A DNA stretch of 33,779 nucleotides from Macrostomum lignano (Eukaryota): NCBI GenBank assembly GCA_002269645.1, contig NIVC01001951.1, positions 1 through 33,779 of the forward strand, read 5' to 3'. The notes below the pieces were generated by a model. The model made no database searches and was not told where the DNA came from. It saw only the letters and a list, made by a program, of their open reading frames with translations. Made by a program: the position numbers and the translations under genes. This document shows positions 1 to 33,779 of the stretch, piece after piece (positions within the stretch are counted from its first letter, which is position 1; each line of letters begins with the position of its first letter).

Positions 1-173
1 CCTTGAACGTAAAACTTGTTATCGTTTTTAAGATCAGTTTCTGAGAATAGACCAATGTCAATATCATCACTGTGCAACCACATGATAATCTCATGCATTT
101 TATTGCTTAGTTTGTTACAGTTCAGGTGTCCTATATTAAGAGCACTATTGGGAGATTTGTTATCGAAAGCCAT
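1..173 (-). CDS. LINE A ORF2 N-terminus (APE endonuclease), truncated by the window
   Basis: Manual translation from ATG at 173: MAFDNKSPNSALNIGHLNCNKLSNKMHEIIMWLHSDDIDIGLFSETDLKN. HLNC and FSET match the APE WNxxG and xQET motifs. Confidence 0.8.
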   Translation of the reverse strand, partial: MAFDNKSPNSALNIGHLNCNKLSNKMHEIIMWLHSDDIDIGLFSETDLKNDNKFYVQ

Positions 174-237
174 AACGTAGTAATAAATTTTACTTCAGGG
201 CTCAGATCTGCCTCCGCACACCGAAGTGGCTTTGGCT

Positions 238-1951
238 TCACCTGCCCTGACAGCGCGGCACTCTTCCCGGATTCATGAAGGTCGTCAGGACCTCCGTCAC
301 TACCCGAATAGCAAGCTGGCTTGCTTCCCAGGCAGTGAGCAGACGTCCCGGCTCGATCTCCATGATCCGGTTGAGTGCCCCGAGAACTACCTCGAGCACG
401 TCCCCCTGAGTGAAGCCCCTCTCACCGTTTCCAGCAGAAGTGGCGGCATTATCAGAGTTAGTTGGATCAGCCTTGCTTGGATTGATCGTGGAAGCTGAGG
501 TATCAAGCGGCGCTGTTGGTTGGGCGGCAGCGGCAGCAGCAGCAGCAGTTGGCAATGCTGATTGGACAGAAGCGGCAGCAACAGCTGTAGGCGGCACTGC
601 TGATTGGACGGCGGCAGTGGCGGCAGCGGCTTTGGACGCTTTGTTCTCATACGCGATTGGTCCTAGAGTTGGCGCCTTATTGACAGCCTCCGCATATGAT
701 GTGGGGCCAGGCATGCCAAAAGTCTGTCTCAACTAATGTCTGGGTATGTTCTACTTTTCTAGACTGTTCTAGTTTTAATTTTAGAGTTTGAACCCTGTGG
801 TGCTCTCTCTCAGTTGCCCTCTCATTAGCGTGCTGTACCGCTGGGCATTTGTAGGAGAAGGCCGGGTGTTCACCTCCACAATTCGCACACTTGAAACCCG
901 TGTCCTTCGGGCAGTCACCGGAATAGTGCGCCCCGGCACATTTGTTGCAAACGAAGCCGGCGTTGCACCTGCTTTCAGTGTGCCCGAGGCCTTGGCACCT
1001 TTGGCACTGGATCTCCTTAACCGGTGGAAGATTGTGCGATTCTTCGCACCGGAATTTTAGCGCCCCCAGCCTAATGCCGTTCTCCAGGCAGGTGTCATAC
1101 GTAGCCCTAGATTTCGTGAACATTCTAATTAGCTGTGTCGGTTGGCCTGAGGCCTTAGAAATAATGCGTGCCGCACATCAAATTGTAGATGTGCTTGGTT
1201 CTCGTCTAGGTATTGAAGCAGTTCCTCAGCTTCCACGGCTGGAGGAACGCCTTTGACGATGAAGGAACGGACCTGCGGCGACTTGAGAGGCTTTCGCAGC
1301 CGATCATCACCTTGGTGCAGTGGCCTATTCGACGGCAGGCGCCTAGTGACAGAGTGCCGTTTATTTCAGTGACTTTTAATGTAGATATTAGTAAGCTGTT
1401 ATGTCGCTTGGTGAGTTAGTGAATACATAGTATCCAGAGCTATGGTACAGCTCTTTTACCGACACGATGCGAGTGTTCGGAAAGTTGGCTTTTAAAAAAC
1501 TTTCAAATTTAATTGGATTTTTGGCCTCAACAGGCATTTCAAATACTACAGGCGAGATTTTGGTTAATTGTTAATGGTTAATAATGGTTAATAATTAATA
1601 ATGGTTAATTAACCAAATGGTTAATTTGGTTAAGTATCTAATTTTGCAGTTGCTAAGTGGATAGCTAGTTTTGTTATCAGTGAGATCTGGACTTGGTAGA
1701 CTAAATTGCATTCTTGTCGTTTTCCCTGTGTCTGCTAATTCACTACTCATTACAGGCTGGTTTTCACCGACGTTGACCACCTGAGGTTCTTCGGTCACTG
1801 TTTGCACACAAGTCGTCGCATTACTGGAGGACACAGGTCAGGACCTTTGGTCTGGACCGGAAGAAGACCGGTTGTTAGCCTTTTTGTTGCAGACCGGAGG
1901 TGAATCGGTGTCCCTTGACGCGCTTCTTTTGCTGTTGGCTTCTACTTCCAT
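238..1951 (-). pseudogene. LINE A ORF1 (gag-like, three CCHC zinc knuckles), disrupted
   Basis: ATG at 1951 (MEVEANSKRSASRDTDSP), then PVVFEMP, FIVKGVPPAVE, and CQRCQGLGHTESRC / CNKCAGAHYSGDC / CANCGGEHPAFSYKC, with an Ala-rich C-terminus (238-732). Contains an in-frame stop, frameshifts and a 66-bp insertion. Confidence 0.8.
1559..1633. repeat. 66-bp scrambled TGGTTAA/TTAACCA insertion in ORF1
   Basis: TTTGGTTAA occurs at 1559-1567 and 1625-1633, with direct and inverted copies of the same motif between them. Removal restores RYLTK|ISPVVF. Confidence 0.7.
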
Positions 1952-2372
1952 TGAAATTAATTGCTATTACTAAAAATTACAAAAAAGCCTTGAAACAGTA
2001 GGCTATTAAAACTATTATTTTAAAACTAATAAAACTGAATTAATAGTATGAAGCAAATAGGCCTACTAATAGTAGTGGATAGCTACCAAAATACAAGAAA
2101 AGACCCTAAGTGATTACTACACACTAAATTCTATAACTCGGGGGAGCCTGGCGCTGAGCTGCAGACCTGCGCGAGGTGCCTGGCGCCGCCGCCGCCGCCG
2201 CCCAGCCGCGCCGCCGACGCCGCAGCCGCCGCAGACAAGCAGGAACCGCCGCCGCACCCACCGAGCACCAGACCGCCGAAGCCGCTGAAGCCGCCGAAGT
2301 CGCGCCGAAGTCGCCGCAGAGAGCCGACGCAGAAGCCGATGCCAACGCCAGGTAAGTCGCCACCCCACATTT

Positions 2373-2532
2373 TGCTTTCCAAAGAGCCCGACTGCTCTGT
2401 AGTTCTAAAGGAACCCCAATTTTAGCTACTTACCCCACTCTAATTATTTCCCCGGGTTGAAACTACTGATAGTAGGCAAAAAGCATATTTGAACCCGCAT
2501 TAATTCCCGTTCCTAAAAACTGCCCTATTACA
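2373..2532 (-). mobile_element. 3' LTR of the Gypsy element (homologous block; distal end unresolved)
   Basis: Begins TGTAATAGGGCA immediately after a polypurine tract. About 80% identical by eye to 25249-25409 of solo LTR A. Confidence 0.75.
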
Positions 2533-2542
2533 CCTCCCCCTC
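2533..2542 (-). promoter_or_regulatory. Polypurine tract (PPT) of the Gypsy element
   Basis: Minus-strand GAGGGGGAGG directly abuts the LTR TGT. Confidence 0.8.
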
Positions 2543-3052
2543 GCTAAACAAATGTGCAAAACCCCTTTTGTACATTGATATTATATTTATTTAACGAAAT
2601 TAATAAGTAATATTGCTTTATCAGCGATATAAGCTACTGTAATAAGAATACACGTATATCAAGTGGGAAGTTACTGGTATGCCGAGTCGTAAAAGTAATG
2701 GGATTAAAAGTTGAAATATGCGGTTGATTAATGGCATGCAGAACTGTATTATTACGACCTGGATTAAATGTTGAACATGTTAATTATGATATGCACCGTT
2801 AACATGAACAATTGCACTATTAAATGGCTGAATATGATAAATTGAGTTTATAGCAAATTGAACTAAAAGGACAAAAATGATTGGCAAGTGTATACAACAA
2901 AGAAAAGAAAAGAAAATGCAGTGCAAAAAGCGGTAAAATAATTTGGCAAGTTTACTCCGATTCTACTCCAAAAGATGGTAAAATAAAAGATGTCATCGAT
3001 TATGTGTAATTGAGCTTAAAGAGTCATTAGTTGGCTAAGTTCTCTATCTTAC

Positions 3053-3751
3053 CTAATTGATTGGCCGGAGATTTTGGGTGTTTTGAGTAGATAGATACAG
3101 TAATCCGTTTATCGGGATCATCTGGTGAGTAGGGTCGAATTGTCTGGCGAAAAACTCCAGCTGCTCAGTAGTCGCTCTCATATTGGTCGGTCCCCGCGCT
3201 CTCCCTTCGGCGTACTGTAAACAGTATGAGCAGGCAATCTCGAAGCATCGGACTGCTTCCTCTGGGGTCGCCGTGGCCAAGAACTGGACGCACGCGTCCG
3301 GTAGCTGCGCCTCGAATCGTCCTGTTTTCCCTGTAGCCAGGATAGCCCGTTTCAAGGCGCGATGGCATTCGCGGAATTTCCGCGCCTGCGTTCCGGGACT
3401 ATCCGGCCGTTCGGCGTTGGTCTCTTCAGGAGCCGGCGTATCACCCAGATCTGCCCTGAGCAATGTAGCGTAATCGATGAGCGTAGACTCAGGCTGGCCT
3501 TGCCCTGCCTGGCATTGCTCGGATGGACACTGCTCCGGCTGGTGATTTGGTTCTTCCGCGGCCGCCTCTTCCTGCTCATCAATGGGTTCCACCCCTTCTT
3601 CCTGTTGCCGTATTTCTTCCATGAATTGCGCCATCTCGTCCCTAAATTCTTCCTCCTTCCGTCTAGTCGCCCTTTCCAGTTCTTCCAATTCTACGTTCAC
3701 GATAACTTTCCTTCGCTCTCGTTCGGCTGCTCTAATTTCCGCCTCTTGCAT
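3053..3751 (-). CDS. Additional ORF between pol and the PPT (acidic coiled-coil N-half, Cys-containing helical C-half); function unknown
   Basis: 232-aa open frame lying between the pol stop (3869) and the AT-rich 3' UTR. No signal peptide or transmembrane segment is evident. It may start about 100 nt further upstream via a frameshift. Confidence 0.55.
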   Translation of the reverse strand: MQEAEIRAAERERRKVIVNVELEELERATRRKEEEFRDEMAQFMEEIRQQEEGVEPIDEQEEAAAEEPNHQPEQCPSEQCQAGQGQPESTLIDYATLLRADLGDTPAPEETNAERPDSPGTQARKFRECHRALKRAILATGKTGRFEAQLPDACVQFLATATPEEAVRCFEIACSYCLQYAEGRARGPTNMRATTEQLEFFARQFDPTHQMIPINGLLYLSTQNTQNLRPIN

Positions 3752-4116
3752 TCGCCTTGTTCTGCCAATTGTATGGCCCTAATCCTTGGGGGCTCATTTT
3801 CTGCCTGTCTTCTTCGTTGGCCATAAATCGTTTTTCCGGATAAACGCGGATTGGGGTATCGGCCATAGCTATTGAGAATTGGGCTGCAAGAGGTTAAATG
3901 GGTTAAACAACTCCGCTATCCTCTGCACATAACTTTTCTGATTTGGCCTGACTGTTAATCTATCTGGAGCATGACGCTCTCTCGCTGGCCTAGTTTCTAA
4001 AATAATCCCTAGATTATTATTGTTATTTAATTGTACTGGCATAACTCCTTGTACACCTACTAAATTATTTTGATTATTATTTTGATGCTGCACTTGTTGA
4101 TTTGGCACTAACTGCA

Positions 4117-4247
4117 CATTATTTTGATTTTGCACTGGCATAAGCTGCTCATTATTTTGATGTTGCACTGGCATAAACTGCTCATTATTTTGATGGTGCA
4201 CTGGCATAAACTGCTCATTATTTTGATGTTGGACTGGCATAAACTGC
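4117..4247 (-). repeat. 33-bp tandem repeat x4 encoding (QFMPVQHQNNE)n at the pol C-terminus
   Basis: CATTATTTTGA recurs at 4117, 4150, 4183 and 4216. Confidence 0.9.
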
Positions 4248-7066
4248 ACTGCGTCTTCGTACTCGTCTTCACTTTCTGAGTCATTGTACACATTCGGCTG
4301 ACTATTGGCTATCTGTTCCTTATTGTACTGCTTCTTATGTTCTTTTGGCTTAGTACTAGCTTCTTCTTCCTGATAATCTGCTTGCGGTACTTTCATTAAA
4401 TTGTCTCTATGCATAATAAGTTCTTCCTTCCTTGCCTTCTTATTTTGTGTAACTGGCCTAATCCTAAAGACTACTTCTGATAATTGTTCTACAATTTCGT
4501 AAACTGCCCTTTGTTTTTGTGAAATTTGTTAGCCTCTGTGTTAGCAATTACTGGATTATTGATAAATACTAAGCTTCCTACAGGCAATATTTTCGGCTTA
4601 GGCTTATTATAGTACTCCTGCTCACGGTTTTGCTGCACTAATTTTAATCTCTTTCTTGCTAGTTCTTGGCCTTCCTGCAGATTCTGCTGGTGTTCCTGGA
4701 CATAAGATGGCAAATCCTGAAACTGTTTCGGCTCGTTCAGCTCATTGTCACAGGGCATTCTAGCCTCTCGTCCAAAGACTAAATAGTGCGGACTAAATCC
4801 TGTGGCAGTGTGCGTGCTGGTTCTCAGAGCTGTTATGCAACCTGGCAACAGAACGTCCCTGTTGGAATGCTCCTTCTCCAGTAAACAGGTGAGAATTGAT
4901 TTAATCTGCTTATTAAGGTTTTCTACTAAGCCATTGCTCTGCGGATGATAACTAGTGGTTCGAGTGTGTCTAATGCCATAGAGGTCTAAAAATTTCTTAA
5001 AGGCCCTACCAGTGAACTGTGTTCCCTGGTCTGTGTGAATCCATTGTGGAATCCCAAAATCAGCGAAAACTCGTTCTTGTAGAATTTTTATAACTGTTTT
5101 AGCCTTCTGATTCCTAATTGCGAATGCGAATGGAAATTTGCTAGTGCTGTCTATGACTGAAAGTACATATTTGTTTCCTGATTTGCTAGTTTGGCCAATA
5201 GGTTCATCAGATCTATGTGTAATCTACCGAACGGTTCGACTACAGGATAGTTCTGAATCGGTGCCCTAATTCTTCGTCTAGTCTTACTTTCTAGGCATGA
5301 TTTACATTTGGCTACGTAGCGTTCAACTGCTGTTGCTAATCCTGGCCTCCAAAATTGAATTTTAATTCTCTGATAAGTTTTATCTCGACCTAGGTGTCCC
5401 GCTAACGGTGAATCATGGAATTGGTGAAAGACTTCACTATCCAGAGACTTGGGCAACACTACCTTTGGATCAGTCTGCCCCATAGATAAGTCTACCTTGA
5501 GTACACCGTCCTCAATTCTGAGCAACTCGTAGTAACCTATGAGGTTCCTACAGTCGTGGGTTAACTCTAGTCGTTCTTGAAATGTCGGTTTAGGCGAGTC
5601 ATTCTCAATTAAATTTCTAACAAAGCCTACCGCCGGATCGGCTAACTGTGCTGCGATCAATTGGTCACGGCGAACTGTGCTACGGAGATAGTCACTGAGC
5701 AGGGCATTGGATGCAGGCGGATTTCCGGTTTTAGGCTCCTGTCCCTGTCTATTGTCTAGCCTACTGCTACTAAAGATCGGAGTATTGTGTCGGTTCGTGA
5801 CAGTGTCTTGTGACGAACAGCATGACGGAACTCCACTGCTCGAGCTACAGGTTTCAGCGAACGCGGAATTGCCTGAGCTGACAGTAAAAGCTGATATCTG
5901 TATTCACAGTTGCCCTACAGCTTAGCGACCTGGCATGTGGGGACATCTCTTCCGGTTGAGGATCAGGGATCCTGGATAGAGCGTCAGCATTCACAAGTTT
6001 AGGGCCACTTCTATGTTCTATCTCAAAATCAAATTCGGAAAGTCTTTCAATCCAACGACCTAAAATGCCTGTCTGTTCGGTTTGGCGAAGCAACCAGGTT
6101 AGGGCATTGTGATCAGTCCTACGAGGTAAAATCTAAAGTACTTCAGCGAGTCAACAATCGCTAGAAGCTCCTTCCTCGTAATCGGATATCTAGTTTCTGA
6201 CTGCCTCATCTTCCGACTATAATACGCGATCGGCCTTTCTATGCCGTCGCTCTGAACTTGATTCAAGACCGCCCCAATTCTGACATCTGATGCATCAGTG
6301 TCTAACACAAAATAAACTTGGGGGTCTGTATTAAACTCTGGGTAAGCAAGCACTTCTTCGGAACACATCCGTTCCTTCAACAGCTCGAAGCATTCATCAT
6401 GAATCCTGGTCCATTTGTCCTGGATACATTTGATGTTCTTCTTGGTCAACTCACAGAGTGGTGCTGCTACCTCGGCAAAATCTCTAACGAATTTTCTATA
6501 GTAATTACAGAGTCCAAGAAAACTCCGAAGCTCTGTCACAGATTTAGGTTTCGGCCAGTTCCTAATTGCTTCTAGTTTCGACGCATCTCTTTTAATTCCT
6601 GTTTTGCCTATGACGTGTCCTAGATATTGTAGCTCTGATTTGAAAAGGTGACATTTCTTAGCCTTTAGTTTCATGTTAGCTTGGATTAGTCTCTTGAGCA
6701 CTTCTTTCAGGTGTTCTAGATGGGCTTCGAAATCTGTACTATAAACTATTACATCATCTAAGTAAGCTATGGCGAACTTCTGTGCAATGTCCTTAAGAAC
6801 TAAGTTCATGCACCTTTGAAAAGTTCCTGGAGCTCCTTGCAATCCCATTGGTAATACTTCGTACTCAAACGAGCCTCGATGTAAAGTTGGAAAGCTAGTC
6901 TTGCACTTATCTTCTTCCCTAAGAGCTATCTGATAATATCCCGAAAATAGATCTAACGTAGAAAATTGACTGGCTCCATGGAGACATGAGAATGTTTCAT
7001 TGATATTAGTTATTGAATACGGAAAGTACTCCGATTTGTTATTTAGTGCTCGATAGTCGTTAACTA

Positions 7067-7428
7067 TTTTTTTTTTATTAGAGGCAAGGGGGTTGTGTGC
7101 ACCCTGGCGCACTTTAGGCGACATAGACACACGACCGGCGAGAGGCATTGCTGCCCATTCCGCCGACTCCCCTGAGCAGGCATACAAGCGCGCGGATACG
7201 TTACGCAGGCACACACTCACACAGGAGTGTACAGCGGCCCTAACTTTATCAATTGTTAGGCATGTACACTTCACTGCGCCTTGGGGGTTGGCTCTCAAGG
7301 CCGTTAATTGCACAAGCGAGCCAAGCCGAAATTCCAATTCAGCCCCAAATTAATGTGGCTGCACTTGGAATCGAGCCTGGGTCGCTGGCACACCAGAGCA
7401 GCTGCGCTACCGCTGGGCTACGGCCCCC
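7067..7428 (-). mobile_element. tRNA-derived SINE (362 bp) inserted in the Gypsy RT
   Basis: 13-bp TSD TAGTCGTTAACTA at 7054-7066 and 7429-7441. The 5' head GGGGGCCGTAGCCCAGCGG...GGCTCGATTCC carries Pol III boxes A and B, and there is a 3' A-rich tail. Removal restores RLVNDYRAL. Confidence 0.9.
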
Positions 7429-8327
7429 TAGTCGTTAACTAATCTCAGCGAACCGTCTTTCTTAGGTACTATGACTAATGGAGTCGAGTACTGCGAGTAA
7501 CTAGGCCTAATGATGCCTCTAGCCAACATGAGATCTAACTGCTCATCTACCTCCTTGATCCAATGAGGTGGAATCTTCCTAGCTGGTATCTGAACTGGGT
7601 TGTTGTCCTTCAAGATAATCTCGTGAGTGACTAAATGCGTTCTGCCTAAGTCTAACTCGTGCTGCGAGAAAGCTGCTGAATGTTCCTTGACGACCTCGAT
7701 CACCTTTTGTCTCTGTTCCTGAGTCAGTTCAGTTCCTATGTTAATCTCACTAATCCAGTCTTCTGACTTGCCCTGTACCTGACTGATCTTTTCTCTGCTT
7801 CCGCAAGACTGCGTGTTCCCATTCTGCTCTTCTTCTGGCTGTTCCTTGAGATAGTTAAGCTCGCTAGTTAAAAGCGGTTTAGCCATCTCTACTAATGCTG
7901 ATGCTGGTACTCTAGCTTCCTGTGAACTGGTGTTGATCACTTCTAAATAAGCTTCCCCTTGTCTTAGAGTTAATAAACTTGGCACTACCGTTACCTTCTC
8001 TGCTCTAGTCTTTAATCCTGATCTGAGTGGCTCAACAACTGATGGCACTCCGAAATTATTTTCACTACCTGCTGCTAATCTGACTTTGACTAATCCTGAA
8101 CTATTGGCTGGAACTGTCGTCTTTTCTGCGACATAGATTCTCCTAACCTGAGGCTTAGCTCTGGTTGATCGAAGCGGAATTCTAGTTCCTTGTTTCATGG
8201 TTAGCAATCCTGCATCGAAGTCGATAGTAGTACAATATTTTTGGACAAACGTCACACCTATTACATTGTCTACATCTGCGTCACATAATAGAAACTCAAC
8301 TTCTTCGAAATCGCCAAATGTTGCCTT

Positions 8328-8458
8328 CGGGTAGTGTAGCTCGCTTGGCTAGTAAAAGGAAAATGAATCCGAAAATCCTGAGTGCGAAACGCGTCGTTAC
8401 TCACACAATGTTGATTTTCGGATTCATTAGTTTGTGAATCCGTACACAAACTACGAAA
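8328..8458 (+). mobile_element. 131-bp structured mini-insertion with a degenerate minimal-hammerhead-like core
   Basis: 5-bp TSD GCCTT at 8323-8327 and 8459-8463; removal restores VIKATFGDF. A perfect 16-bp inverted repeat flanks CTGAGTGCGAAACGCGTC, and there is a second 9-bp hairpin. Orientation is inferred only from the core. Confidence 0.7.
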
Positions 8459-9530
8459 GCCTTAATAACTACGAAACCGTTAATTGGAATAGGCTCTTCC
8501 ATAAAAGAAGTAATTCTATTGTCCCAATGCTTAATTAGATGCCTATTCTTGCCAGTGAAAAGCTGCTTCCAGGTTTCGCGTGCTAAGATATTTCTATTAC
8601 TGCCAGTGTCTAATAGATAAACTATTTCCTTATTTAAAATGCTGCCAGTGATGTACAAATCGTAACTTTGCTTTTTAGTTTGTTCAATTAGTTTTGGTTG
8701 TTTTAGCTGCTGCTTGCCAGAATAAGGTTCCTGTTGTGGTGCGTTTGAAAAGTGCTGAGAGTAAATGTTTGGCTGATTAAATGATTGATTAAATGTTTGC
8801 GCATGCCTACTGTTATACACTGAAGAATTCAATTCACTATTTACAGAAAAAGTATCGCTGCTATTTACAGGTTGTGAGGCTACAGACTGTGAGGGATTGT
8901 AGAAAAAATACTTAACTAAAGACTACAGACTATTTAATTGGAGTTAAATTGAAGGAGCAGGAGGAGCAGTAAGTGGGCGCAGGGCCCAAACCGATATATT
9001 TATAGAACATTTAACTTTGGGGGGTTGAGCCCAGAATAATAAAAAGAGGGGGTGGAGTGCGCGACTGAGGAAAGAGGCGAGAACGGAGAGCCAATCAGAA
9101 CGCAGCAAGGGAGAGAGAGATAAGAATAACAAGATTGAGCTAGACAGAGAGAGAGAAAACGGAGTAAACAGAGACAAGTGAAGGTGAACTAAGAAATGAA
9201 TAGGAAAGTCGCGACACTCCCCCCAAAAATGGAACATTTTTTGAATTTTCGAGTACCAATAGAATTATGAATTAGAGTTCAAGAAACAACTTTAAAGCAA
9301 ATTTAACAATGGTGTACGAGCTACAAACACGACTAAGAACTTCAATGCAAAAACTGTGGAGACTAGAGTGAATGCAAATTGACCAAGAAATTTCACGTGT
9401 GCGATTTTAATGAATAAATTGTTACGAGTATAACCAATGAAAAAACTGACTGCATCTACCCTCCCCCCTAAAAAATTAATTTAATTTTTTACATTGTGAA
9501 AGAAAAAATTGAATGACGAATTAACAAGGC

Positions 9531-10064
9531 GATCCGGCAGGCGAGCCCCGCGGCGCCCCGGCCGAGAATTTGAAACCGAGAGAGACCGAGGACACCGCAG
9601 GACGCACCCCCGGCAGACGATGAGTGAAGAGAGTCGAGACGATCCGGCAGGCGAGCCCCGCGGCGCCCCGGCCGAGAATTTGAAACCGAGAGAGACCGAG
9701 GACACCGCAGGACGCACCCCCAGGAGACGATGAGTGAAGAGAGTCGAGACGATCCGGCAGGCGAGCCCCGCGGCGCCCCGGCCGAGAATTTGAAACCGAG
9801 AGAGACCGAGGACACCGCAGGACGCACCCCCGGCAGACGATGAGTGAAGAGAGTCGAGACGATCCGGCAGGCGAGCCCCGCGGCGCCCCGGCCGAGAATT
9901 TGAAACCGAGAGAGACCGAGGACACCGCAGGACGCACCCCCAGGAGACGATGAGTGAAGAGAGTCGAGACGATCCGGCAGGCGAGCCCCGCGGCGCCCCG
10001 GCCGAGAATTTGAAACCGAGAGAGACCGAGGACACCGCAGGACGCACCCCCGGCAGACGATGAG
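9531..10064. repeat. 110-bp GC-rich tandem array (about 4.9 units) in TRIM internal region 1
   Basis: GATCCGGCAG at 9531, 9641, 9751, 9861 and 9971. Units alternate CGGCAGACG and CAGGAGACG. Confidence 0.95.
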
Positions 10065-13494: not shown

Positions 13495-13500
13495 GGATCC

Positions 13501-22411: not shown

Positions 22412-22447
22412 GCCCGTGCGGATTGGGCCGTTGCATGAGTTGCAGGC

Positions 22448-22600: not shown

Positions 22601-22674
22601 AGGAGCTTTGGTGTTAAAACCGGGTCGCCGCGATGAGGCAGCTCCTTTGACCGCACCAGAAGGTGCACCAACCC
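22601..22674 (-). ncRNA. HDV-like self-cleaving ribozyme (predicted)
   Basis: P1 GGGTT/GACCC, J1/2 hairpin GCACC-TTCT-GGTGC, P2 AGGAGCT/AGCTCCT, P3 GCC/GGC, L3 TCATCGC, GG, short P4 and J4/2 ACCAA. Confidence 0.65.
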
Positions 22675-24410: not shown

Positions 24411-25140
24411 CGCAGGTGCTGAATGAACGCCGGCATCTCAATCTCGACCGGCACTCCCCGGACTACTACAGAGTGCACCGATTGGACTGGAGGTGGCCGG
24501 TGAGCTGGTCTGTTATACGTTAGTCTGGCATTAGGCAGTCTACGGTTAACTGGTACACCATTTATGTTCGGCTCCCTCAGCGGCCCTCGGAGGAAGATCT
24601 GATGATCTCTGGGCGTCGCTAGGAAGACAAGGTAGCCGTTCTTAGAATTGACTGGCCTGGTGAGCGTAGCTCGGGCGTTGCCCTGGAAGTTTGAAGCCAA
24701 CCATTTGAGGAAGCTAATTTGGCTGAAGCTACTGTCGCCGGTGTCGCCGTCGAAGGTAAAGACGACTGGCACTAAATTCTGCCGGCCTGGTGCAGCATTA
24801 TTATTATTATTCCTAATTTGATTATTAATATTCTGACCCGCAGCTGACGCATATGAGCGCCCTTGGATGTTAGACCGTTGAGCTGCGCCACCGCGCCCCG
24901 CACCAACGTTGCCGCTACGGTCTTGGACTTGGTTGCGGGAACTGCCAAGCGCAGCAGGGCCGGGCGCTGGCCGCCCCACTGCTGCCTGGTTGCCCGGTCG
25001 CCACGCTCGTCCGGGGGCCCGACCTAGCAGAATTGGAGTCCGCCCGCCTCTGCCAGGCCCATCCCCGACGGGTGCTGCTGCCGCTGTCGCGCCTCCGTGC
25101 CCCGGTGTGCCGACGCCAGGTGGATGGGTTACCCTAAAGG

Positions 25141-25409
25141 TGAGTGAGATGCGTACACCCTCCTGGACGCCGACTCCTGGGACACTGTGCTTACATCTTC
25201 GCTGGCAGGCTTGTTAGTCCTTGTTATTCGCAAGACGCGCAAGCAGGATGCTTTTCCAAGAGCCCAACTGCTCTGTAGTTCTAAAGGATCCCGAAAACTA
25301 GCGATTTACCCCTGCTCTAATTATTTCCCCGGGTTAAAACTACTGATTGTAGGCAAAAAAGCGTATTTCCCCGCAACTAGTCCCGTTCCTAAAATAATGC
25401 CCTACTACA
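25141..25409 (-). mobile_element. Solo LTR A (269 bp), related to the Gypsy 3' LTR
   Basis: TG...CA termini and 4-bp TSD AAGG at 25137-25140 and 25410-25413. Homologous to 2373-2532, and removal restores the frame. Confidence 0.85.
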
Positions 25410-25555
25410 AAGGCAATTGCTATGCTTACTCGTTTCAATCGTTTTACACCAGTCGGGCACATCCTACCGACACCCCGGCACCGGTAGCACCAGATGGTGG
25501 CCAACCGGCCGGTATTCAAGTCGAAATCGCCCCCGCGGCGGTTGCTGCCTTCGCC

Positions 25556-26050
25556 ACCGTAGCCTCCGCCGTAGTTTCTCTCTCCGCCGTAGCCTCTCTC
25601 TCCGCCGTAGCCTCTCTCCGACGTAACCTCTCTCTGACCTAGCATCTCTCTCCGACCTAGCCTCTCTCTCCGACGTAGCTTCTCTCTCCGCCGTAGCCTC
25701 TCTCTCCGCCGTAGCCTCTCTCCGACGTAACCTTTCTCCGACCTAGCATCTCTCTCCGACGTAGCCTCTCTCCCCGACGTAGCTTCTCTCTCCGCCGTAG
25801 CCTCTCTCTCCGACGTAGCTTCTCTCTCCGCCGTAGCCTCTCTCTCCGACGTAGCCTCTCTCTCCGCCGTAGCCTCTCTCCGACGTAACCTCTCTCCGAC
25901 CTAGCATCTCTCTCCGACGTAGCCTCTCTCTCCGACGTAGCTTCTCTCTCCGCCGTAGCCTCTCTCTCCGACGTAGCCTCTCTCTCCGACGTAGCCTCTC
26001 TTTCCGACGTAGCCTCTTTCTCCGACGAAGCTTCTCTCTCCGACGTAGCC
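25556..26050 (-). repeat. 16/18-bp minisatellite, consensus GGAGAGAGAGGCTACG(GC/TC), read as (GERGY[G/V])n
   Basis: About 28 imperfect units; variation in GA-dinucleotide number shifts the frame. Confidence 0.9.
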
Positions 26051-27053: not shown

Positions 27054-28280
27054 CTAAAAATAAGAAAAGTAACCAACCAACAAGCAGATTAAACAGAAAA
27101 CGTGTGACCTGACCTGAAGAGTCCTGTAACCTGAAGCGTATGGCAGGCCGTTGCCATAGGTATACCCCGGCCCAAACCATACTACCTTACGCTTTTCTGG
27201 GCGCCCGTTGGTTTGGTGGTGAAACGCAACAGGGTGAATCTCATTCATGATGATTTTCTTGAGATCGTTTTCAGTTTTAGCTAGGGCTTGAGGTAAGTAC
27301 CTGAGCTGGCCAAAGTTGTGACCCAGATTGATTACTTGTTTAGCAGTCATGTCTACTTGAACCGTTTTAGTACCAGTGCCAGAGCCTGACCCCGGGGAAA
27401 CCTCACCTGGAGTCGAGCAGTCGTCGGATGGCAGAGGATGGTTTGCAGCTATGGACAACCTGGATTTGGCCGAGGCGACCGTTGATGCTGTTTCTGACGC
27501 AGTCGTAGTCGTCTTTAGGCTCGCAAATGTTTGCTGAGACTCTGAGGCTCTTTGGTGAGTGCTGGTGGGAATCCGGGAGCTCATTGAGGCCCTGACATTA
27601 GGCTTTTTGGAGCTAGGTTAGGGGATTCGGTATCAGCAGCAGAGCGCTTTGGGTTTTCTCGGTCAACTTCCATGGGACTACTTAGTAAAACTATAAGATA
27701 AATTAAAACTATAAAAAAAACTATTGCAAAATGCTAGATGGGCTACTATGAGTAGGCGGAAGTCACCAAACTACAAAAATGTCCCTACAGAGCCTGACGG
27801 ATAGCAGACTATAGCCGGGAGCCTGGCGCTAGGAAGCCGCTGTCTCGCGCGAGCCTGACGACGCCGCAGACCGCCGCCGCCACCGCCCCGACGTTGGACC
27901 AGCACGAAGTAGGCAATACGCCTAAGTAGGCAATAAGCGCACAGGCAACTAAGGAGAGAAAGGAGAGAACACGGCAGGTGGATGGCGCGCTATACCGTAG
28001 GGGAAGGAGGAAGGAGGAAAATAACAGCCGAAACACAGACGACGGAGGCGCAAAACAAAGAAGAGAGATGCAACAATCAAAAGGTGCGAGCCAAAGAACA
28101 GAGAAAAAGCAAAAACAGTAGTAAGATGGCCCAGAGCCCGTCGCAGATGGGTTAGGAAAAATGACACAGTACATTAGAGAAGCAAAGAGGAAGGCAAAAT
28201 GAAAAAGGAAGAAAGAGGACAGACACCAAGCACGCGCCACACCTATGGCAGCATAGACCAGAAGCAGCATAGGCAGAAGA
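27054..28280 (-). mobile_element. LINE E 5' end: 5' UTR plus ORF1 N-terminus, homologous to LINE A
   Basis: Shares the UTR motif AGCGCCAGGCTCCC..TATAG and an AT-rich leader with LINE A. ATG at 27673 gives MEVDRENPKRSAADTESP versus MEVEANSKRSASRDTDSP in LINE A. Confidence 0.6.
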
Positions 28281-28282
28281 CC

Positions 28283-29843
28283 AATCATTGACGAAAGGGA
28301 CCTCGGCGGCGTCAGCAAGGCCTCTCTCTGCCATCAATTGTGGTGTTCAGATTTTCCTTCCAATGTAAATTAATTTCATCCATATCATTAAAAGCAATTA
28401 AAGATTTGTCTAATTTGAATTTGTTAGCAAACTTAGGTTGATTCGCGATCTGGCTGATTAGAGAGTCGCTACAATTGATAAGGTTGTTCAATTTCCTGTT
28501 CTTAAAATTAGGTATATCAGTAGTGAAAGAGTTAATGCCCAGACCTCTGTCACGAACCCTTGCATGAATTATAGGAGACGGAGTATTTTTGGGAAGTCTG
28601 AGCACATTGATTACCCACTTTCTGACCGTGGTATCCGCTTCTAGCAGAGTTTTTTATGTATTCTACCGTTAGTAAGAATGTAATTAACCTTAGGAATAAT
28701 ATTGGTAGAGAGGAAAAGTACATACGTTGCTGAGGCCTAAGAGGGGCCTCTTTAAGTTTAGCAAGCATGTCTTTCAGTGCTTTTAATCCCGATTGCACTT
28801 GCCCTTTGGCATTAAGTTCGATACCCAAATAACTATTTTGAAGGCCGATACTAGGTAGTTCCTGATTGTAAATTTTCAATTTAATATTTTGATTATTAAG
28901 CCATCTTTTATTCTTCCCGTCCCTCACGATCGAGATGGTAGCACTCTTGTTGATGCTAACCTCCAGCCCCGTTGAAGCAAGGGCCTCTTCAAAAGTTTTC
29001 AGACGGTTTTTAAGACCGGCTTCAGTCGACGCGCAGATAGCCATATCGTCCGCAAAGGCTGCGGAGTTAACTCTCTCTTGAGCAATTGGAAAGGCTATGT
29101 GCGGGTCGAGTGAGCCTAGGACTGCGTCGATAACAAAATTAAATAGAATCGGTGATAAAGGGTCACCTTGTTTGACACCCCTACCTAGCTTGGTAGTGGC
29201 CCCAAAAATGTCAGTGTTTGTATATAGATTGTCTAGATAGTTAATTAATAGTTCCGGAATACCAACTCTTCTTGCTGCTCTAAATTAAGTAGGGTGGTTG
29301 ACCGAATCAAAAGCTTTTTTAGGTCTAGGAAGGCCAAGAACAGAGGTGAATTACCAGCTCTGGCCTCCGCTAGAAGGTTTTCGATTAAAAAATGATTCGC
29401 GCCAAGCCCATCTAAACCTAGTTTAAAGCCTCTCTGAACACTAATAATACTGTCCTCTGCAGCTAGTCGCCGTGCTAAGATCTTATGGTACGTTCTACAT
29501 GTAAGGTTTCCTATAGATAACGGTCTGAATTCAGCTGGTGACGCTGGCTTGTCAACTTTCGGAATAAGAATTGTTCTAGAGTGTTTAAAAGAGGCTGTGT
29601 TATACCACATGCCATAATGCCATTAAATAAATAAGTTAAGACGTTGATGTCTACTTGCTTAATAGTTTCAACCCCAAGACCATCTGGACCCGCAGCTGTC
29701 TTGCCAAAGTCCTTAACAGCCCAATGTACTTCCTCCAGCTTAATCGGATTAGCTAAACTAGTAATAGGATCGCAGATAGGTTTAGTAGGCCTCTCATCTG
29801 TACCCGAAAGATTCGAGATTAAATCACCCCAGAATTTAGTATA
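28283..29843 (-). pseudogene. R2-like (RLE-type) non-LTR RT fragment
   Basis: AAGPDG, TILIPK..PAEFRPLSI, QRGF, GVKQGDPLSP, AFADD, YLGI, PLRPQQR, RLPKNTP..IHA...GLG and DG/RGL..VP.VNDW. Frameshifted; no RLE domain and no rDNA flank seen. Confidence 0.8.
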
Positions 29844-32800
29844 TTCTTCTTCTTCTTCTTCTTCTTCCACCTTTTTTTCGCCTCCCGGCGTAGGTGGCAC
29901 CCTGTGTCTCGGACGTTTCCTCTTCTTCTGTTACTCGCCGCATGCACTCTCTCGTGCCGTGCCATGTTGGTTGCTGACAGCCATCTCTTACAGTATCGAC
30001 ATTCTGCTCTCTTCCTTTTGTGGATCCTTGCTATCATTCTCGCCGCTTCGTCGTTCGTCTTCGGTCCTTCCATTGCATGGGGCTCCTCCGCGCACTTCTT
30101 CCTGTGTCTTGCGTAGTTAGTCTTACTGATCCACGTTTTACAGTCGTTACACTCTCTTCTTGTGCCTTCCGTCCTGCCTCCCGTGCACCATTTCTCGTGA
30201 TTCTTTCTTGTCGCTTCCGTTCTGAACTCGCTGTTGCATCTCTCGCATCTCATTCTTATGCCCGTATCGGTCTTGTGCATTCTTTTCTGGTGGATGGCTA
30301 AGCCTCCTCTCGATCTGCATACTTTTCCGCAGTTCTTTTCCCAACACCTGAAACCTGTCAGTTCGTTTTCATCCATTTGAGTGCTGTTGAGCTGGTTTTG
30401 TTCCTCTCGTCCTTCGTCGTCTCTTTCTGCACCTTTGCATCTCAGCCGTTCGATCTTTTCCCACTCGACGTCTCTTTTCCTGATGATCTCTTTCCACTTG
30501 ATCTTGTCGTTCGCGTATTGTCCTACCTTGAGTGGGTCGAGTTTTGTTTTCCGGACCAGCTTTTTCCAGTAGGTGATAATTGTAGTTCTTCTCTTCTTCG
30601 GTCTTCTTATTTTCTCTATCCTTTTATTCCATCCCATCACGCAGATCTTTGTGAGGCTGGTATCCGGTAGTCTTAGGACGTGACCCATTCGTCTCCAGTG
30701 TGCGATCTCAATTTTTCTCTGGATACTTTTAATTCCAAGAGATCGTCTTACGTCCCACATGTTCACTTGCTTTTCTTCCATTTCACGTAGAGGTTCCTTG
30801 GTTTTACTGCTCCAGATAAAGCGGTAGCATTTGTCTATTGTTCTTTGCAGTTGATTTACTTCGCCTTGCTTGAACGGTCTCGCCCCTGCGTTGAACGTCA
30901 TCGTGCTTTCCACACATGCCTCTATCACTCTCGCCTGGGTTCGTTTACTCAATCTTGTTCTCCTGAGTCTTTTCTTGACTTTAGCCTATGCGTTTGTTGC
31001 TCTTTGCAGTCTCTGGTGGATGTCTTCTTTGCTGCCAAGCCATACACCCAACATCCGGATCTTATTACTTTCCTCTGTTCCCAAAATTGCTGTCTCTTCT
31101 TTCTCATCGTTCGTTCTCTCTTCCAACCATCCCATGACTTCCTTCACCGTCTTTGTACCTTCCTCGATCTCCTTCTTCTCGCCTATCACTGTGGTGTCGT
31201 CTGCGAAAAGTGACCAGGTGATCCGTGTGGTGATTGATTCTTCCGTGAACTGGTAGTTTCTCTGTGGGGGCAGGTCATTGCGTGGTAGGTATGTCCATTC
31301 GATACCTATTTCCAGACCCTCGCTTGCTGCTTTGATTTTTCTTTCGGTCTCGGCTGCTCGCATGACCGCCTGGTGGTAGATATTGAAAAGCACTGGCGAG
31401 GTCGCACATCCTTCTCGCAGTCCTCTCTGGGGAAAGAATGTCTGGCTGTTCTCGTCCTCGGTGTGTATCTTGTAGGCGGTGTTTTCGTGCAGGTCTTTAA
31501 GTTTATCAATCATCTTCTCTGGCATCCCGTGGTGTGCCAACAGTTTCCATAATGCTGGCTTATTCACTCTTGGGTAGGCTTTTTCAGGTTTTTCCTCGTT
31601 GTTTTCGTCGTTTTCTTCACTTTCCTCGTTCTCCGTGTTTGCTCGTGCTTCCCTCATCAGTGTTGCGTCTTCTTGGAGTCTCAGGATAATCTGGGTGGCG
31701 TCCATTGTCGATCTGTTACGCCTGAAGCCTGCTTGATTTTCGTCTAGGCACTCGGTTTCCTCCGCCGACTTGTTAATTCGGGTTGCGATTATTCTCGCCA
31801 GTATTCTGCTTGTGATTGGAAGTAGGCATACTCCTCGGTAATTGTTCAGATTCTTTTTGTCACCCTTCTTATGCAGAGGGATTATTAGACCAAGTTTTTG
31901 GCTCTCTCTCCACTTCTTTGCTGGTTCTTCCCAGAGTCTCGTAATCTCGGTGAAACATTCTTCTTTTACGGTTTCGTTTGCCGCCCTGGTGTAGATTTGT
32001 CTAACTTCATCCTCTCCGGGTGCTCCATTCTTCATCTTGTTCAACTCTCTCTCGAATTCTGTCTTAGTGATGGGTTCGATCAGGGCTGTGTTTGCTATCC
32101 TTCGCACTTCTTCGGTCACTTGAGGCTTTTCAAGCGCGTCAATCCTGGTCATCATGGTCGTTGGGTCGTTCTCGAAGCGATCTTTCTGCACTAATTCGAG
32201 GTGTTCTTTGAAATCGCTTGCACTGAACAGATCTTTCCCCCTGCTTTGGTTTTGGTTTCCCATCTCCGTTATACCCATTTCTTTGAGGTTTTCGTACATC
32301 CCTGCGATATTTCCTTTCTCGCAATTTTCTTTGCACTTTTGAGCAAGTCTGTCCCACCAGTCCTCCTCCCACTGCGTAAGTTTCTCGTTCTTCTTCCTTT
32401 TCTCACGGAGTTCTTGCTTCTTTGTTTCCAGGTTTCTTCTGTCTTCTTCGCTTCGCGTTTCTAGCCATCTGCGGTTTGCTTCGTTTCTCTCCTTCAGTGC
32501 GTCTTTGATGCCTAAGTTAAGTACCCTTAGTTCACCTTCCTTCCCGGCAAGCCATGGGTTTGTTTGTCTTTTCTTGATTCCGCATACGGCCTCTGCTGTC
32601 TTCACTAGGTTTGCCTCCATTGTTTCCCATTGGTTCTCTCTTGTTTTCTGGTACGTTTCTTTTGCGAATCTTTCTCGTATTTCAACTTCTCTGAGTTTTT
32701 CCCATTCGATCCTCTTCCTCTTTTGCTTCTTTATCGCTGTCGCCTTGTTCTTCTTGATGATCTTCTTGATTTGTTTCGTCAAGTTCGGGTGTATCCAAAG

Positions 32801-33779
32801 GACCTTCGGTAGGTGATCTGATAGCTTCGGGCTGTGGTCCGTGTACACTTTTCTCACGGTCTTGTGCCTCTGGTCTTTTCTTACCAGGAAACCGTCCAGT
32901 TCGTACCATCTCTTCGTTTTTGGGTGTTTCCAAGTGCCCCCTTCTTTTGCTTGAAAAAGGAGCTTGTCCATACCAGGTTCCACTCTTCCATCCATAGCAT
33001 TAAATCTATTCCTTGTTCGTTAGCCGTTTGCATGTTACATTTTCCTATGCAGCTGAACGGGGTACCAGATTTCGGGTTCATTCTTGTGTTGTTGCTTCCT
33101 ACTGATGCATTGAAGTCGCCCCCGATGAAAATGGCTTTCTTTTGTCTTACCGTTGTCATGAGTCTTTCGAGTTCATTCCGTATTTCTGAGGTTGTCTTGT
33201 CGTAGCCTTCGACGCCTTTGACTGGTTGGTATACCGAGATTAGTATGCAGTCACCTAATTCAATTGCCAGGCTTCTTTCTTGTGGATGCATCTTCCTTCC
33301 TTCTTTTAACCACAATAGCCATGCTGGTTCTGATAGTAGGATTCCTACTCTTCCGGAGTGAATTAAGTGGCTTGTTCCTTTGTTAGTCCTATACTCCCTG
33401 ATTCCCACTTTGGTTTCTTGGGTTTCCGTGATTAAGGTAATTTGCCATTTATAGGCTGTCTTACGATTTCGCCAAACCTTGCCGATCCGATGTTGGCTCG
33501 CTGTACATTCCAGGTTGCAATCTTTATCCTTGCTTCTTTCCATTCCGATTCTGCTTCTTCGGTTTTCTGTTTTATTTGTTTTTCTTTTCTTTTCTTTCTT
33601 CTTAGTGTTCTCCTCTTATTTCTTGCTCTTCTTTGATCTGCGTTCCTAGGTCCTGGATTATTCTCAATGGTGCACAGGTCCTTCTCAATCCTTGTCTTAA
33701 CGATCTCTCCGATTCTTTTCCTAGTTCTCCTTCCTCTTCCTCGTCCGAGTTGGCACTAGGGTGCCTCACTTTTTTGTTG
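29844..33779 (-). mobile_element. RTE-like LINE with (GAA)8 tail, inserted in the R2-like ORF; 5' end off-window
   Basis: APE (IATWNVQR, ITE, GGDFNA, LDGF, SDH), RT (NYRGVCLL, QAGFR, GLREG, LFADD) and C-terminal C2H2-like fingers; tail at 29844-29867. Contains an in-frame TAG at 30986 and frameshifts. Confidence 0.85.
33648..33680 (-). other. 2A-like motif DLCTIENNPGP upstream of the RTE endonuclease
   Basis: In frame with KIATWNVQR. Thr replaces the consensus Asp. Confidence 0.5.

What the first reader, a model, noticed from the sequence alone, without database searches (positions are those of the whole stretch)
1..33779. All 10 orientable retroelements are co-oriented in a multi-layer nest: candidate uni-strand piRNA cluster or TE trap
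Seen: LINE A, Gypsy, SINE, TRIM, LINE C, the Ingi-like LINE, solo LTR A, LINE E, the R2-like fragment and the RTE all read on the minus strand, across unrelated superfamilies and at least two nesting levels. If insertions were independent, the two-sided chance is 2 x 0.5^10, about 0.002. Known: flamenco-type uni-strand piRNA clusters accumulate TEs antisense to one long transcript. Inference: a plus-strand precursor here would silence LINE, SINE, LTR and TRIM families at once. An alternative is selection against one orientation inside a large intron.
Basis: partly seen in the sequence, partly recalled or inferred. Interest (0 to 1): 0.75.

Follow-up and report, generated by a model that had tools for sequence, protein, structure and literature searches.

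The report
Co-oriented retrotransposon pile in a flatworm contig
This 34-kb flatworm (Macrostomum lignano) contig consists almost entirely of retrotransposons that all point the same way, which is real but only modestly unlikely by chance, is partly forced by how these elements insert into each other, and cannot be shown from sequence to be a small-RNA (piRNA) source.

Summary
The window is the whole contig NIVC01001951.1 of the Macrostomum lignano assembly Mlig_3_7, so it has no flanks. The core observation holds. Every retroelement that can be oriented lies on the minus strand: all Pfam TE domains are minus and none plus, and tblastn gave 531 minus hits and 0 plus.

The list of ten needs correcting:
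- 'LINE E' and the 'Ingi-like LINE' are one element, split by a 1,183-bp LTR-like insert.
- That insert cannot be oriented.
- The 'R2-like' zinc fingers belong to the upstream RTE-like LINE.
- One further LINE 5' fragment, also minus, was not listed.

That gives nine oriented elements.

At two LINE-LINE junctions a microsatellite tail abuts the next LINE with no spacer. Orientation there is mechanically coupled, leaving about seven independent events (two-sided p about 0.016, not 0.002). A 764-Mb, more than half repetitive genome should hold tens to a few hundred such windows by chance.

My best reading (about 0.6) is an ordinary retrotransposon pile-up whose co-orientation comes from insertion mechanics plus chance. 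A uni-strand piRNA cluster stays possible (about 0.15). It needs small-RNA mapping, which these tools cannot do. The make-up, six LINEs and one Gypsy, is unlike flamenco.

The parts
29844..33779 (-). RTE-like LINE. It has a 2A-like TIENNPGP, an EEP endonuclease, an RT and four C-terminal C2H2 zinc fingers, and ends in (GAA)8 at 29867-29844. It is nearly intact: one in-frame stop and one frameshift.
   Evidence: Pfam RVT_1 and Exo_endo_phos_2. Homologues P0018, P0024 and P0028 align colinearly over 29939-32971 and have the same C-terminal fingers. Tail read.
28319..29843 (-). It is an RT fragment whose 5' end starts directly after the (GAA)8 tract and which is 3'-truncated after the thumb. No endonuclease domain is present.
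   Evidence: Pfam RVT_1, 3.8e-18; junction sequences; minus-strand tblastn hits over 28652-29610.
27054..28318 (-). It comprises a 5'UTR and the ORF1 start (ATG at 27673). Both boundaries are approximate.
   Evidence: 60% identity over 484 aligned columns with LINE A 2250->1816 in the same orientation; MEVDRENPKRSAADTESP versus MEVEANSKRSASRDTDSP.
25564..26050 (.). 18-bp tandem array, about 27 copies. On the minus strand it reads as a GERGY/RGG-like repeat followed by a degenerate CCHC-like knuckle. Its family is unassigned.
   Evidence: TRF and repeat finder; translation; sequence.
24411..25440 (-). It holds the 5'UTR, whose 160-nt block is shared with LINE A, and the N-terminal RRM-like part of ORF1. 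The 5' boundary is approximate.
   Evidence: Direct repeat 25249-25409 versus 2373-2532 at 84%; ORF1 colinearity with LINE A across the insert.
23228..24410 (.). It runs TGTAG...ATCACA and is flanked by a 4-bp TSD TGCG (24414-24411 and 23227-23224). It splits ORF1 of the I-like LINE. Its orientation cannot be determined.
   Evidence: Sequence and flanks; no similarity elsewhere in the window; no coding signal.
17982..23227 (-). It holds the ORF1 CCHC part (22674-23227), a 2A-like DIETNPGP, three PHD-like fingers, and an intact 1462-aa ORF2 with EEP, RT and RNase H (18023-22411). The tail is A4(CAA)5 at 18000-17982. About 60% GC.
   Evidence: Pfam; protein on record only on this contig; tail; composition.
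13735..17981 (-). LINE C. It is 5'-truncated inside ORF1 at a (CAG)5 tract that directly abuts the I-like tail. It has frameshifted EEP and RT domains, a degenerate C-terminal Cys motif, and a (CAA)4 tail at 13746-13735.
   Evidence: Pfam Exo_endo_phos_2 and RVT_1; sequences.
3053..13734 (-). Ty3/Gypsy element, internal region. Order on the minus strand: leader; gag (12109-12965); PR (about 8401-8832); RT/RNase H (8255-7428 and 7066-6099); integrase (5660-4489); and extra C-terminal ORFs (4414-3053). There are several frameshifts and no recognisable LTR pair. The 2560-3052 stretch beyond it is unassigned.
   Evidence: Pfam Retrotrans_gag, RVT_1, RT_RNaseH(_2), Integrase_H2C2 and rve. No LTR similarity in repeat search, blastn or Smith-Waterman.
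8898..11976 (-). TRIM-like non-autonomous LTR element nested in the Gypsy between gag and PR. It has three 317-319-bp LTRs and two roughly 1,063-bp internal regions, each carrying a 110-bp x 4.9 tandem repeat. The two units are 99.7% identical. TSD ATCCC.
   Evidence: Repeat families D2-D4; TRF; PPT, PBS and TSD read on the minus strand.
7067..7428 (-). tRNA-derived SINE nested in the Gypsy RT. It has an A box TAGCCCAGCGG, a B box GGCTCGATTCC and an AATA10 tail. The perfect 13-bp TSD lies at 7441-7429 and 7066-7054.
   Evidence: Sequence. The Gypsy motif LRLVND|YRALN is restored when the insert and one TSD copy are removed. ARAGORN and Rfam do not call it.
1..2560 (-). LINE A. It has a 5'UTR, an ORF1 (start at 1951) with RRM-like and three CCHC knuckles, and the first roughly 60 aa of the ORF2 endonuclease. 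It runs off the contig end. The 5' boundary is approximate.
   Evidence: ORF1 is 35% identical and colinear with the I-like ORF1; reciprocal tblastn 842-1204 versus 22827-23195; sequence.

Best explanation
This is an ordinary retrotransposon pile-up in a repeat-only contig of the Macrostomum lignano genome. No dedicated function can be demonstrated.

Shown: nine retroelements lie on one strand. They are six LINEs or LINE fragments, one Gypsy, one TRIM-like element and one SINE.

Inferred: part of the co-orientation comes from how LINEs integrate. They insert by target-primed reverse transcription, in which the nicked target strand must pair with the 3' tail of the LINE RNA. A LINE with a microsatellite tail that lands in a matching tract of another LINE must therefore take that LINE's orientation. 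A reverse transcriptase that switches from one LINE RNA to another at such a tract gives the same result.

Two of the three LINE 3' ends visible here show this kind of junction. A4(CAA)5 of the young I-like LINE is fused directly to (CAG)5 inside ORF1 of the old LINE C. The (GAA)8 end of the RTE-like LINE is fused directly to the truncated LINE b.

The remaining roughly seven independent orientations agree by chance, or through a weak regional bias such as transcription or replication direction. In a genome this large and repetitive, that is expected many times.
For: - All-TE content, all on the minus strand.
- The contig is a whole 33.8-kb record of Mlig_3_7. That assembly is 764 Mb with N50 215 kb and is more than half repetitive (PMC5730564), giving about 22,600 windows of this size.
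- Zero-spacer tail-to-body junctions: for (CAA)5|(CAG)5, and for (GAA)8|LINE b. LINE C itself ends in (CAA)4, so the two neighbouring LINEs share the tail motif.
- Precedent for tract-directed, strand-determined LINE integration: Zorro3 always integrates at poly-A tracts through pairing of a poly-T flap with its RNA tail (PMC1965478).
- piRNA clusters cover only 0.63% of the M. lignano genome (PMC4604429).
- There is no strand asymmetry in polyadenylation signals: 15 versus 14 AATAAA and 25 versus 23 ATTAAA.
Against: - Seven to nine agreeing orientations remain nominally significant (p 0.004-0.016).
- The SINE and the TRIM-like element have clean TSDs and are independent insertions. Tail coupling cannot explain them, yet they agree with the rest.
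- I could not establish which mechanism made each tail junction: tract targeting, nested insertion with the other half displaced, or template switching. No TSDs were found around the I-like LINE or LINE C.
- The (GAA)8 tract could belong to LINE b's coding sequence rather than to the RTE-like tail.
- No genome-wide baseline could be computed.
- TE strand bias has correctly predicted unistrand piRNA clusters in Drosophila (PMC10643416).
Confidence: 0.6

Rival explanations
1. Uni-strand (flamenco-type) piRNA cluster or TE trap. A plus-strand Pol II transcript runs antisense through all the elements and is processed into antisense piRNAs. Insertions in the antisense orientation are kept because they silence their families.
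For: - Complete strand bias over nine elements from LINE, SINE and LTR classes.
- Several inserts are recent, as expected of an active trap: TRIM-like units 99.7% identical, perfect SINE and TRIM TSDs, and an intact 1462-aa ORF2.
- M. lignano has 436 piRNA clusters, including unidirectional ones, with a median size of 9.7 kb and a maximum of 93.7 kb. Macpiwi1 piRNAs are mostly antisense to TEs (PMC4604429).
- A strand-bias search found genuine unistrand clusters in Drosophila (PMC10643416).
Against: - No small-RNA, transcript or promoter evidence is available.
- Clusters cover only 0.63% of the genome, so the prior is low compared with chance co-orientation.
- The effective number of independent events is about 7.
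- Content is LINE-dominated, whereas strand bias in flam-like clusters is driven only by Gypsy elements and those clusters span 227 kb to 1 Mb.
- Polyadenylation signals are not depleted on the proposed precursor strand.
Confidence: 0.15
2. The contig lies inside a long intron or other transcription unit of a host gene. Selection against TE splice and polyadenylation signals in the sense orientation has left only elements antisense to that gene.
For: Orientation bias of LINE and LTR elements within introns is well established in animals (general knowledge; not tested here). The contig contains no exon or non-TE sequence, so it could be wholly intronic.
Against: - No host exon, splice signal or gene is visible, and the contig has no flanks.
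- Intronic biases are usually moderate (roughly 60-70%), not 9 of 9.
- Repeat-only short contigs more often come from gene-poor heterochromatin.
Confidence: 0.1
3. Regional insertion bias. The region is replicated or transcribed in one direction, and target-primed insertions (LINEs and the SINE) favour one template strand, which skews all TPRT-derived elements the same way.
For: Seven of the nine oriented elements (six LINEs and the SINE) integrate by target-primed reverse transcription. A preference of L1 for the lagging-strand template is known from mammalian cell studies (general knowledge; not tested here).
Against: Reported biases are small. They do not apply to the integrase-mediated Gypsy and TRIM-like insertions, which also agree in orientation. 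Nothing about replication in M. lignano is known from these data.
Confidence: 0.07

Closest known systems
flamenco and flam-like unistrand piRNA clusters of Drosophila (PMC10643416)
   Same: A TE-dense, gene-free stretch with essentially all annotated TEs on one strand, including recent insertions.
   Different: - flam-like loci span 227 kb to 1 Mb, and their strand bias is driven exclusively by Gypsy/ERV elements.
- They are defined by one-strand piRNAs, a conserved promoter and somatic expression.
- Here there are 34 kb, six LINEs, one SINE, one Gypsy and one TRIM-like element, with no RNA evidence.
Unidirectional piRNA clusters of Macrostomum lignano (Zhou et al. 2015, PMC4604429)
   Same: Same species. 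The size is within the reported range (median 9.7 kb, maximum 93.7 kb) and the sequence is TE-rich.
   Different: Those clusters were defined by uniquely mapping 28-32-nt reads on the older ML2 draft. Their coordinates cannot be transferred to this contig with the tools at hand, and their TE orientation was not reported.
Tract- or tail-directed LINE integration and head-to-tail LINE chains. Examples are Zorro3 at poly-A tracts (PMC1965478), and, from general knowledge, microsatellite-specific LINEs, HeT-A/TART telomeric arrays and chimeric template-switch retrocopies.
   Same: The 3' microsatellite tail of one LINE is fused without spacer to a similar tract in the next LINE: (CAA)5|(CAG)5 and (GAA)8|LINE b. 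Neighbouring LINEs share a (CAA)n tail. Co-orientation follows from the mechanism.
   Different: Only two junctions are seen. No TSDs or empty sites are available. Target preference at the family level is untested, and the downstream partners belong to different LINE families rather than the same one.
Nested retrotransposon 'graveyards' in repeat-rich or heterochromatic DNA
   Same: - Elements are inserted into elements with clean TSDs (SINE and TRIM-like in the Gypsy; LTR-like insert in a LINE).
- Truncated fragments abut each other.
- An LTR element lacks its LTRs.
- The contig is far shorter than the assembly N50.
   Different: Such regions usually show mixed orientations. Here all nine oriented pieces agree.

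Membership tests
Uni-strand (flamenco-type) piRNA cluster | TE-dense locus with a strong strand bias of TE insertions | tested here: met
   9 of 9 orientable elements are on the minus strand. Pfam found no plus-strand domain, and tblastn gave 531 minus and 0 plus hits.
Uni-strand (flamenco-type) piRNA cluster | Abundant 24-32-nt, 1U-biased small RNAs mapping to one strand, antisense to the TEs | not testable with these tools
   No small-RNA data can be accessed. The supplements of PMC4604429 held as text give no usable cluster coordinates.
Uni-strand (flamenco-type) piRNA cluster | A single upstream promoter and a long continuous precursor transcript | not testable with these tools
   The window is a complete contig with no flanks. 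No RNA data are available. Polyadenylation signals are not depleted on the plus strand, which is only weakly informative.
Uni-strand (flamenco-type) piRNA cluster | Content and strand bias dominated by Gypsy/ERV-type LTR elements (flam-like definition, PMC10643416) | tested here: not met
   There is one Gypsy and one TRIM-like element against six LINEs or LINE fragments and one SINE.
Ty3/Gypsy LTR retrotransposon (element at 3053-13734) | Domain order gag, PR, RT, RNase H, integrase on one strand | tested here: met
   Retrotrans_gag, RVT_1, RT_RNaseH_2, Integrase_H2C2 and rve occur in that order on the minus strand. PR is inferred from the DTGS motif in ORF 8401-8832.
Ty3/Gypsy LTR retrotransposon (element at 3053-13734) | Pair of long terminal repeats flanking the internal region | tested here: not met
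   No direct repeat joins 12960-13760 to 2500-3100 in the repeat finder, in blastn at word sizes 7-9, or in Smith-Waterman (score 23 versus shuffled 22.6 +/- 2.4).
TRIM (terminal-repeat retrotransposon in miniature) | Short LTRs with TG..CA ends, PBS and PPT, a TSD, and no coding capacity | tested here: met
   317-319-bp LTRs start with TG, and the terminal copy ends in CA. PPT GGGGGGAG, a TGGCACCC primer-binding site and a 5-bp TSD ATCCC are present. No Pfam domain was found in the part scanned; the internal 110-bp-repeat ORF sets (M13, M14) were not scanned.
TRIM (terminal-repeat retrotransposon in miniature) | Miniature size (usually under about 1 kb for LTR-internal-LTR) | tested here: inconclusive
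   One LTR-int-LTR unit is about 1.7 kb, and the copy here is a 3.08-kb three-LTR tandem. It is better called a small non-autonomous LTR element.
tRNA-derived SINE | Internal Pol III A and B boxes in a tRNA-like head, an A-rich tail, and a TSD | tested here: met
   A box TAGCCCAGCGG, B box GGCTCGATTCC, A10 tail and a 13-bp perfect TSD. The tRNA-like head is too diverged for ARAGORN or Rfam.
   The C2H2 fingers are the C-terminus of the upstream RTE-like ORF. Homologues P0018, P0024 and P0028 have EEP, RT and four C2H2 fingers and align colinearly over 29939-32971. No endonuclease domain follows the RT fragment.
I/Ingi-type LINE (18023-25440) | APE endonuclease, RT and RNase H in ORF2; ORF1 with CCHC knuckles | tested here: met
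   Exo_endo_phos, RVT_1 and RNase_H are present. ORF1 has three CCHC knuckles. Assignment to a clade (I, Ingi or Nimb) was not tested phylogenetically.

The most novel reading that the evidence does not exclude
The contig is part of a flatworm uni-strand piRNA cluster that, unlike flamenco, is built mainly from LINEs and SINEs. A plus-strand precursor would yield antisense piRNAs against at least six retroelement families at once. A second, less far-reaching novel reading is that M. lignano LINEs with (CAA)n or (GAA)n tails home into matching codon-repeat tracts inside other LINEs and so build co-oriented LINE chains.
Probability: 0.15. Interest if true: 0.5.

Novelty: already known. Interest (0 to 1): 0.25.

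Why it matters
If the locus produced one-strand piRNAs, it would show a flamenco-like architecture outside arthropods, and one dominated by LINEs. That would support using TE orientation alone to find piRNA sources in poorly studied genomes.

As things stand, the main value is cautionary. Orientation counts overstate significance in three ways:
- fragments of one element are counted twice;
- LINEs are joined through their tails;
- many windows are scanned.

The annotated map of this contig may be useful for TE annotation in M. lignano. It includes an intact GC-rich LINE with a 2A-like peptide, an RTE-like LINE with C-terminal zinc fingers, a SINE and a very young TRIM-like tandem.

Tried and rejected
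1. Genome-wide or flank baseline. The window is the whole contig. The three protein searches (I-like ORF2, RTE-like ORF, Gypsy RT-RH) returned no close M. lignano paralogues with contigs, and the RTE-like ORF is not on record. No other M. lignano loci could be sampled.
2. LTRs for the Gypsy. None were found by four methods. The idea that the missing LTR halves lie beyond the flanking LINEs found no support.
3. The idea that LINE D (5' fragment) and LINE C (3' part) are one LINE split by the I-like LINE. I rejected it as unproven. The expected CCHC region is absent upstream of the I-like 5' end, and no TSD was found.
4. Orienting the 1,183-bp LTR-like insert. It has no internal homology, coding signal or asymmetric feature.
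5. tRNA and Rfam scans for the SINE head. There were no calls, so the SINE was identified by eye from its boxes, tail and TSD.
6. Polyadenylation-signal asymmetry as a proxy for a plus-strand precursor. The counts were symmetric and uninformative.
7. Supplementary tables of the M. lignano piRNA paper. They contain no usable cluster list or orientation information.
8. Plus-strand coding remnants in the unannotated stretches (2540-3060, 12960-14300, 23228-24410, 26040-27060, 27880-28330). Nothing scored below E of about 0.005.

Full report
**Origin.** The 1462-aa ORF at 18023-22411 (minus) is on record on a single contig, NIVC01001951.1 of GCA_002269645.1, whose length equals the window (33,779 bp). 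That accession is the Mlig_3_7 assembly of the free-living flatworm Macrostomum lignano (PMC5730564). The assembly is 764 Mb in 5,980 contigs with N50 215 kb, and more than half of it is repetitive. The window is therefore a complete, short, repeat-only contig. No flanks exist into which the orientation count could be extended.

**Orientation check.** I translated all stop-to-stop ORFs of 50 aa or more on both strands and scanned them against Pfam. On the minus strand the hits were as follows.
- EEP and RVT_1 at 30989-33778.
- RVT_1 at about 28.3-29.8 kb.
- EEP, RVT_1 and RNase H in the intact ORF 18023-22411.
- EEP and RVT_1 at 14.25-17.1 kb.
- A Gypsy set between 3.0 and 12.8 kb: Retrotrans_gag, RVT_1, RT_RNaseH_2, Integrase_H2C2 and rve.

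The plus-strand ORFs gave no family at all. From that scan I excluded only frames antisense to the intact ORF2 and the 110-bp repeat blocks. tblastn of the window's own TE proteins plus the retrieved LINE homologues gave 531 minus-strand and 0 plus-strand hits. A relaxed search of the unannotated stretches found no plus-strand coding remnant.

**Non-coding elements.** Two non-coding elements can also be oriented, and both read minus.
- *SINE.* At 7428->7067 a tRNA-derived SINE interrupts the Gypsy RT between LRLVND and YRALN. It has an A box TAGCCCAGCGG, a B box GGCTCGATTCC, an A10 tail and a perfect 13-bp TSD TAGTTAACGACTA. ARAGORN and Rfam do not call it.
- *TRIM-like element.* At 11976->8898 a non-autonomous LTR element sits between Gypsy gag and PR. 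It has three LTRs of 317-319 bp and two internal regions, each with a 110-bp x 4.9 tandem repeat. The two units are 99.7% identical. A polypurine tract GGGGGGAG precedes the LTRs and a TGG primer-binding site follows them on the minus strand. The TSD is ATCCC.

- *One element counted twice.* The ORF at 24401-24979 ('LINE E') and the CCHC ORF at 22674-23270 (ORF1 of the 'Ingi-like LINE') align end to end with the single ORF1 of LINE A. Identity is 35%, and the alignment is colinear across the join. They are one LINE, split by a 1,183-bp insert (24410->23228) with TG..CA ends and a 4-bp TSD TGCG.
- *An element that cannot be oriented.* That insert, 'solo LTR A', has no asymmetric feature I could use and no homology elsewhere in the window.
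- *A wrong label.* The four C2H2 fingers upstream of the 28.3-29.8-kb RT are not an R2 N-terminus. Homologues of the RTE-like ORF (P0018, P0024, P0028) have EEP, RT and four C-terminal C2H2 fingers, and they align colinearly from 32971 down to 29939. The RT fragment ('LINE b') is simply truncated at both ends.
- *An unlisted element.* The stretch 27922->27521 aligns with LINE A 2250->1816 at 60% identity over 484 columns, in the same orientation and including the ORF1 start codon. This adds a further minus-strand LINE 5' fragment ('LINE D').

The corrected tally is nine oriented elements, all minus. Nesting is proven for one level only.

**Junctions.** Three LINE 3' ends are visible.
- The I-like LINE ends in A4(CAA)5 at 18000-17982. 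This is followed without any spacer by (CAG)5, which is in frame with the ORF1 C-terminus of the frameshifted LINE C.
- LINE C itself ends in (CAA)4 at 13746-13735.
- The RTE-like LINE runs into (GAA)8 at 29867-29844, followed directly by the 5'-truncated LINE b.

A zero-spacer fusion of a microsatellite tail to a similar tract cannot be positional coincidence. It implies one of three things: insertion of one LINE at a tract matching its RNA tail, insertion into the neighbour's tail, or a template switch at microhomology. In each case the strand of the tract fixes the orientation, so the pair does not count as two independent trials. Tract-directed, strand-determined LINE integration has experimental precedent in Zorro3, which always integrates at poly-A tracts through pairing of a poly-T flap with the RNA tail (PMC1965478). 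I could not decide among the three mechanisms. No TSDs flank the I-like LINE or LINE C, and the (GAA)8 tract might be LINE b coding sequence.

**Statistics and priors.** Nine independent elements would give a two-sided p of 0.004. With two coupled pairs, about seven events are independent and p is about 0.016. The genome holds about 22,600 windows of this length and more than half of it is repetitive, so tens to a few hundred windows like this are expected by chance. piRNA clusters defined by unique 28-32-nt reads cover 0.63% of the genome: 436 clusters, both unidirectional and bidirectional, with a median of 9.7 kb (PMC4604429). That is roughly 140 window-equivalents, only some of them unidirectional. 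Co-orientation alone therefore leaves the cluster reading a minority possibility, which I put at about 0.15.

**Comparison with known unistrand clusters.**
- In Drosophila, a search for LTR-rich 100-kb windows with strong strand bias did find genuine unistrand clusters.
- Those loci span 227 kb to 1 Mb, and their bias is driven exclusively by Gypsy elements.
- Here six of nine elements are LINEs.
- Polyadenylation signals are equally frequent on both strands, so there is no sign of selection for an uninterrupted plus-strand transcript.
- The intron alternative cannot be assessed, because the contig contains no non-TE sequence.

**Verdict.** The piRNA-cluster interpretation is neither supported nor excluded. 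The most economical reading is a retrotransposon pile-up in repeat-rich DNA. Its uniform orientation owes something to LINE integration mechanics and the rest to chance or a weak regional bias. Mapping the existing small-RNA and RNA-seq data to this contig would settle the question.

Noticed in passing
window 22411-22717 (minus), just upstream of the first Met of the 1462-aa ORF2: The open frame upstream of ORF2 encodes a canonical 2A-like 'ribosome skipping' motif, LAGDIETNPGP, 13 residues before the first Met. Three PHD-like Cys/His fingers follow it. A weaker TIENNPGP precedes the endonuclease of the RTE-like LINE at about 33.6 kb. 2A-like peptides are known in some LINE clades (from memory; not checked in the literature here).
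   Followed up: no
window 18023-23270: The I-like LINE is about 60% GC, whereas most of the contig is 35-50% GC. Its ORF2 is fully intact. Its closest relatives in a 5.8-billion-protein collection are only 41% identical, and no second copy is on record. This is odd for an apparently young element: it could be a low-copy or recently arrived family, or an effect of sparse gene calling for this assembly.
   Followed up: partly
window 29939-30400 (minus): The RTE-like LINE carries four C2H2 zinc fingers at the C-terminus of its EEP-RT ORF. Dozens of homologues from other, unnamed eukaryotic assemblies share this architecture (Pfam zf-C2H2 in P0018, P0024, P0028 and others). I did not assign a clade.
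   Followed up: partly
window 8898-11976: The TRIM-like element is present as LTR-int-LTR-int-LTR, with units 99.7% identical and all three 317-bp LTR cores identical. This implies a very recent unequal exchange or tandem integration. Each internal region is mostly a 110-bp x 4.9 GC-rich tandem repeat with long minus-strand ORFs that have no known domain.
   Followed up: partly
window 25440-26100: An 18-bp tandem array of about 27 copies translates on the minus strand as GERGY/RGG-like repeats and runs into a degenerate CCHC-like knuckle (CYRCRGVGRMC). It may be the remnant of a gag-like protein of an unidentified element, lying immediately upstream of the I-like LINE 5' end.
   Followed up: no
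window 3053-4414 and 4103-4247: Downstream of its integrase the Gypsy has two further ORFs of 181 and 232 aa. The first contains a 33-bp x 4.4 repeat encoding (FMPVQHQNNEQ)n. Neither matches a Pfam family, so it is unclear whether they are an env-like or accessory gene.
   Followed up: no
window 2373-2532 and 25249-25409: A 160-nt block is 84% identical between the 5'UTRs of LINE A and the I-like LINE, although their proteins are only about 35% identical. It may be a conserved internal promoter or regulatory module shared between LINE families.
   Followed up: no
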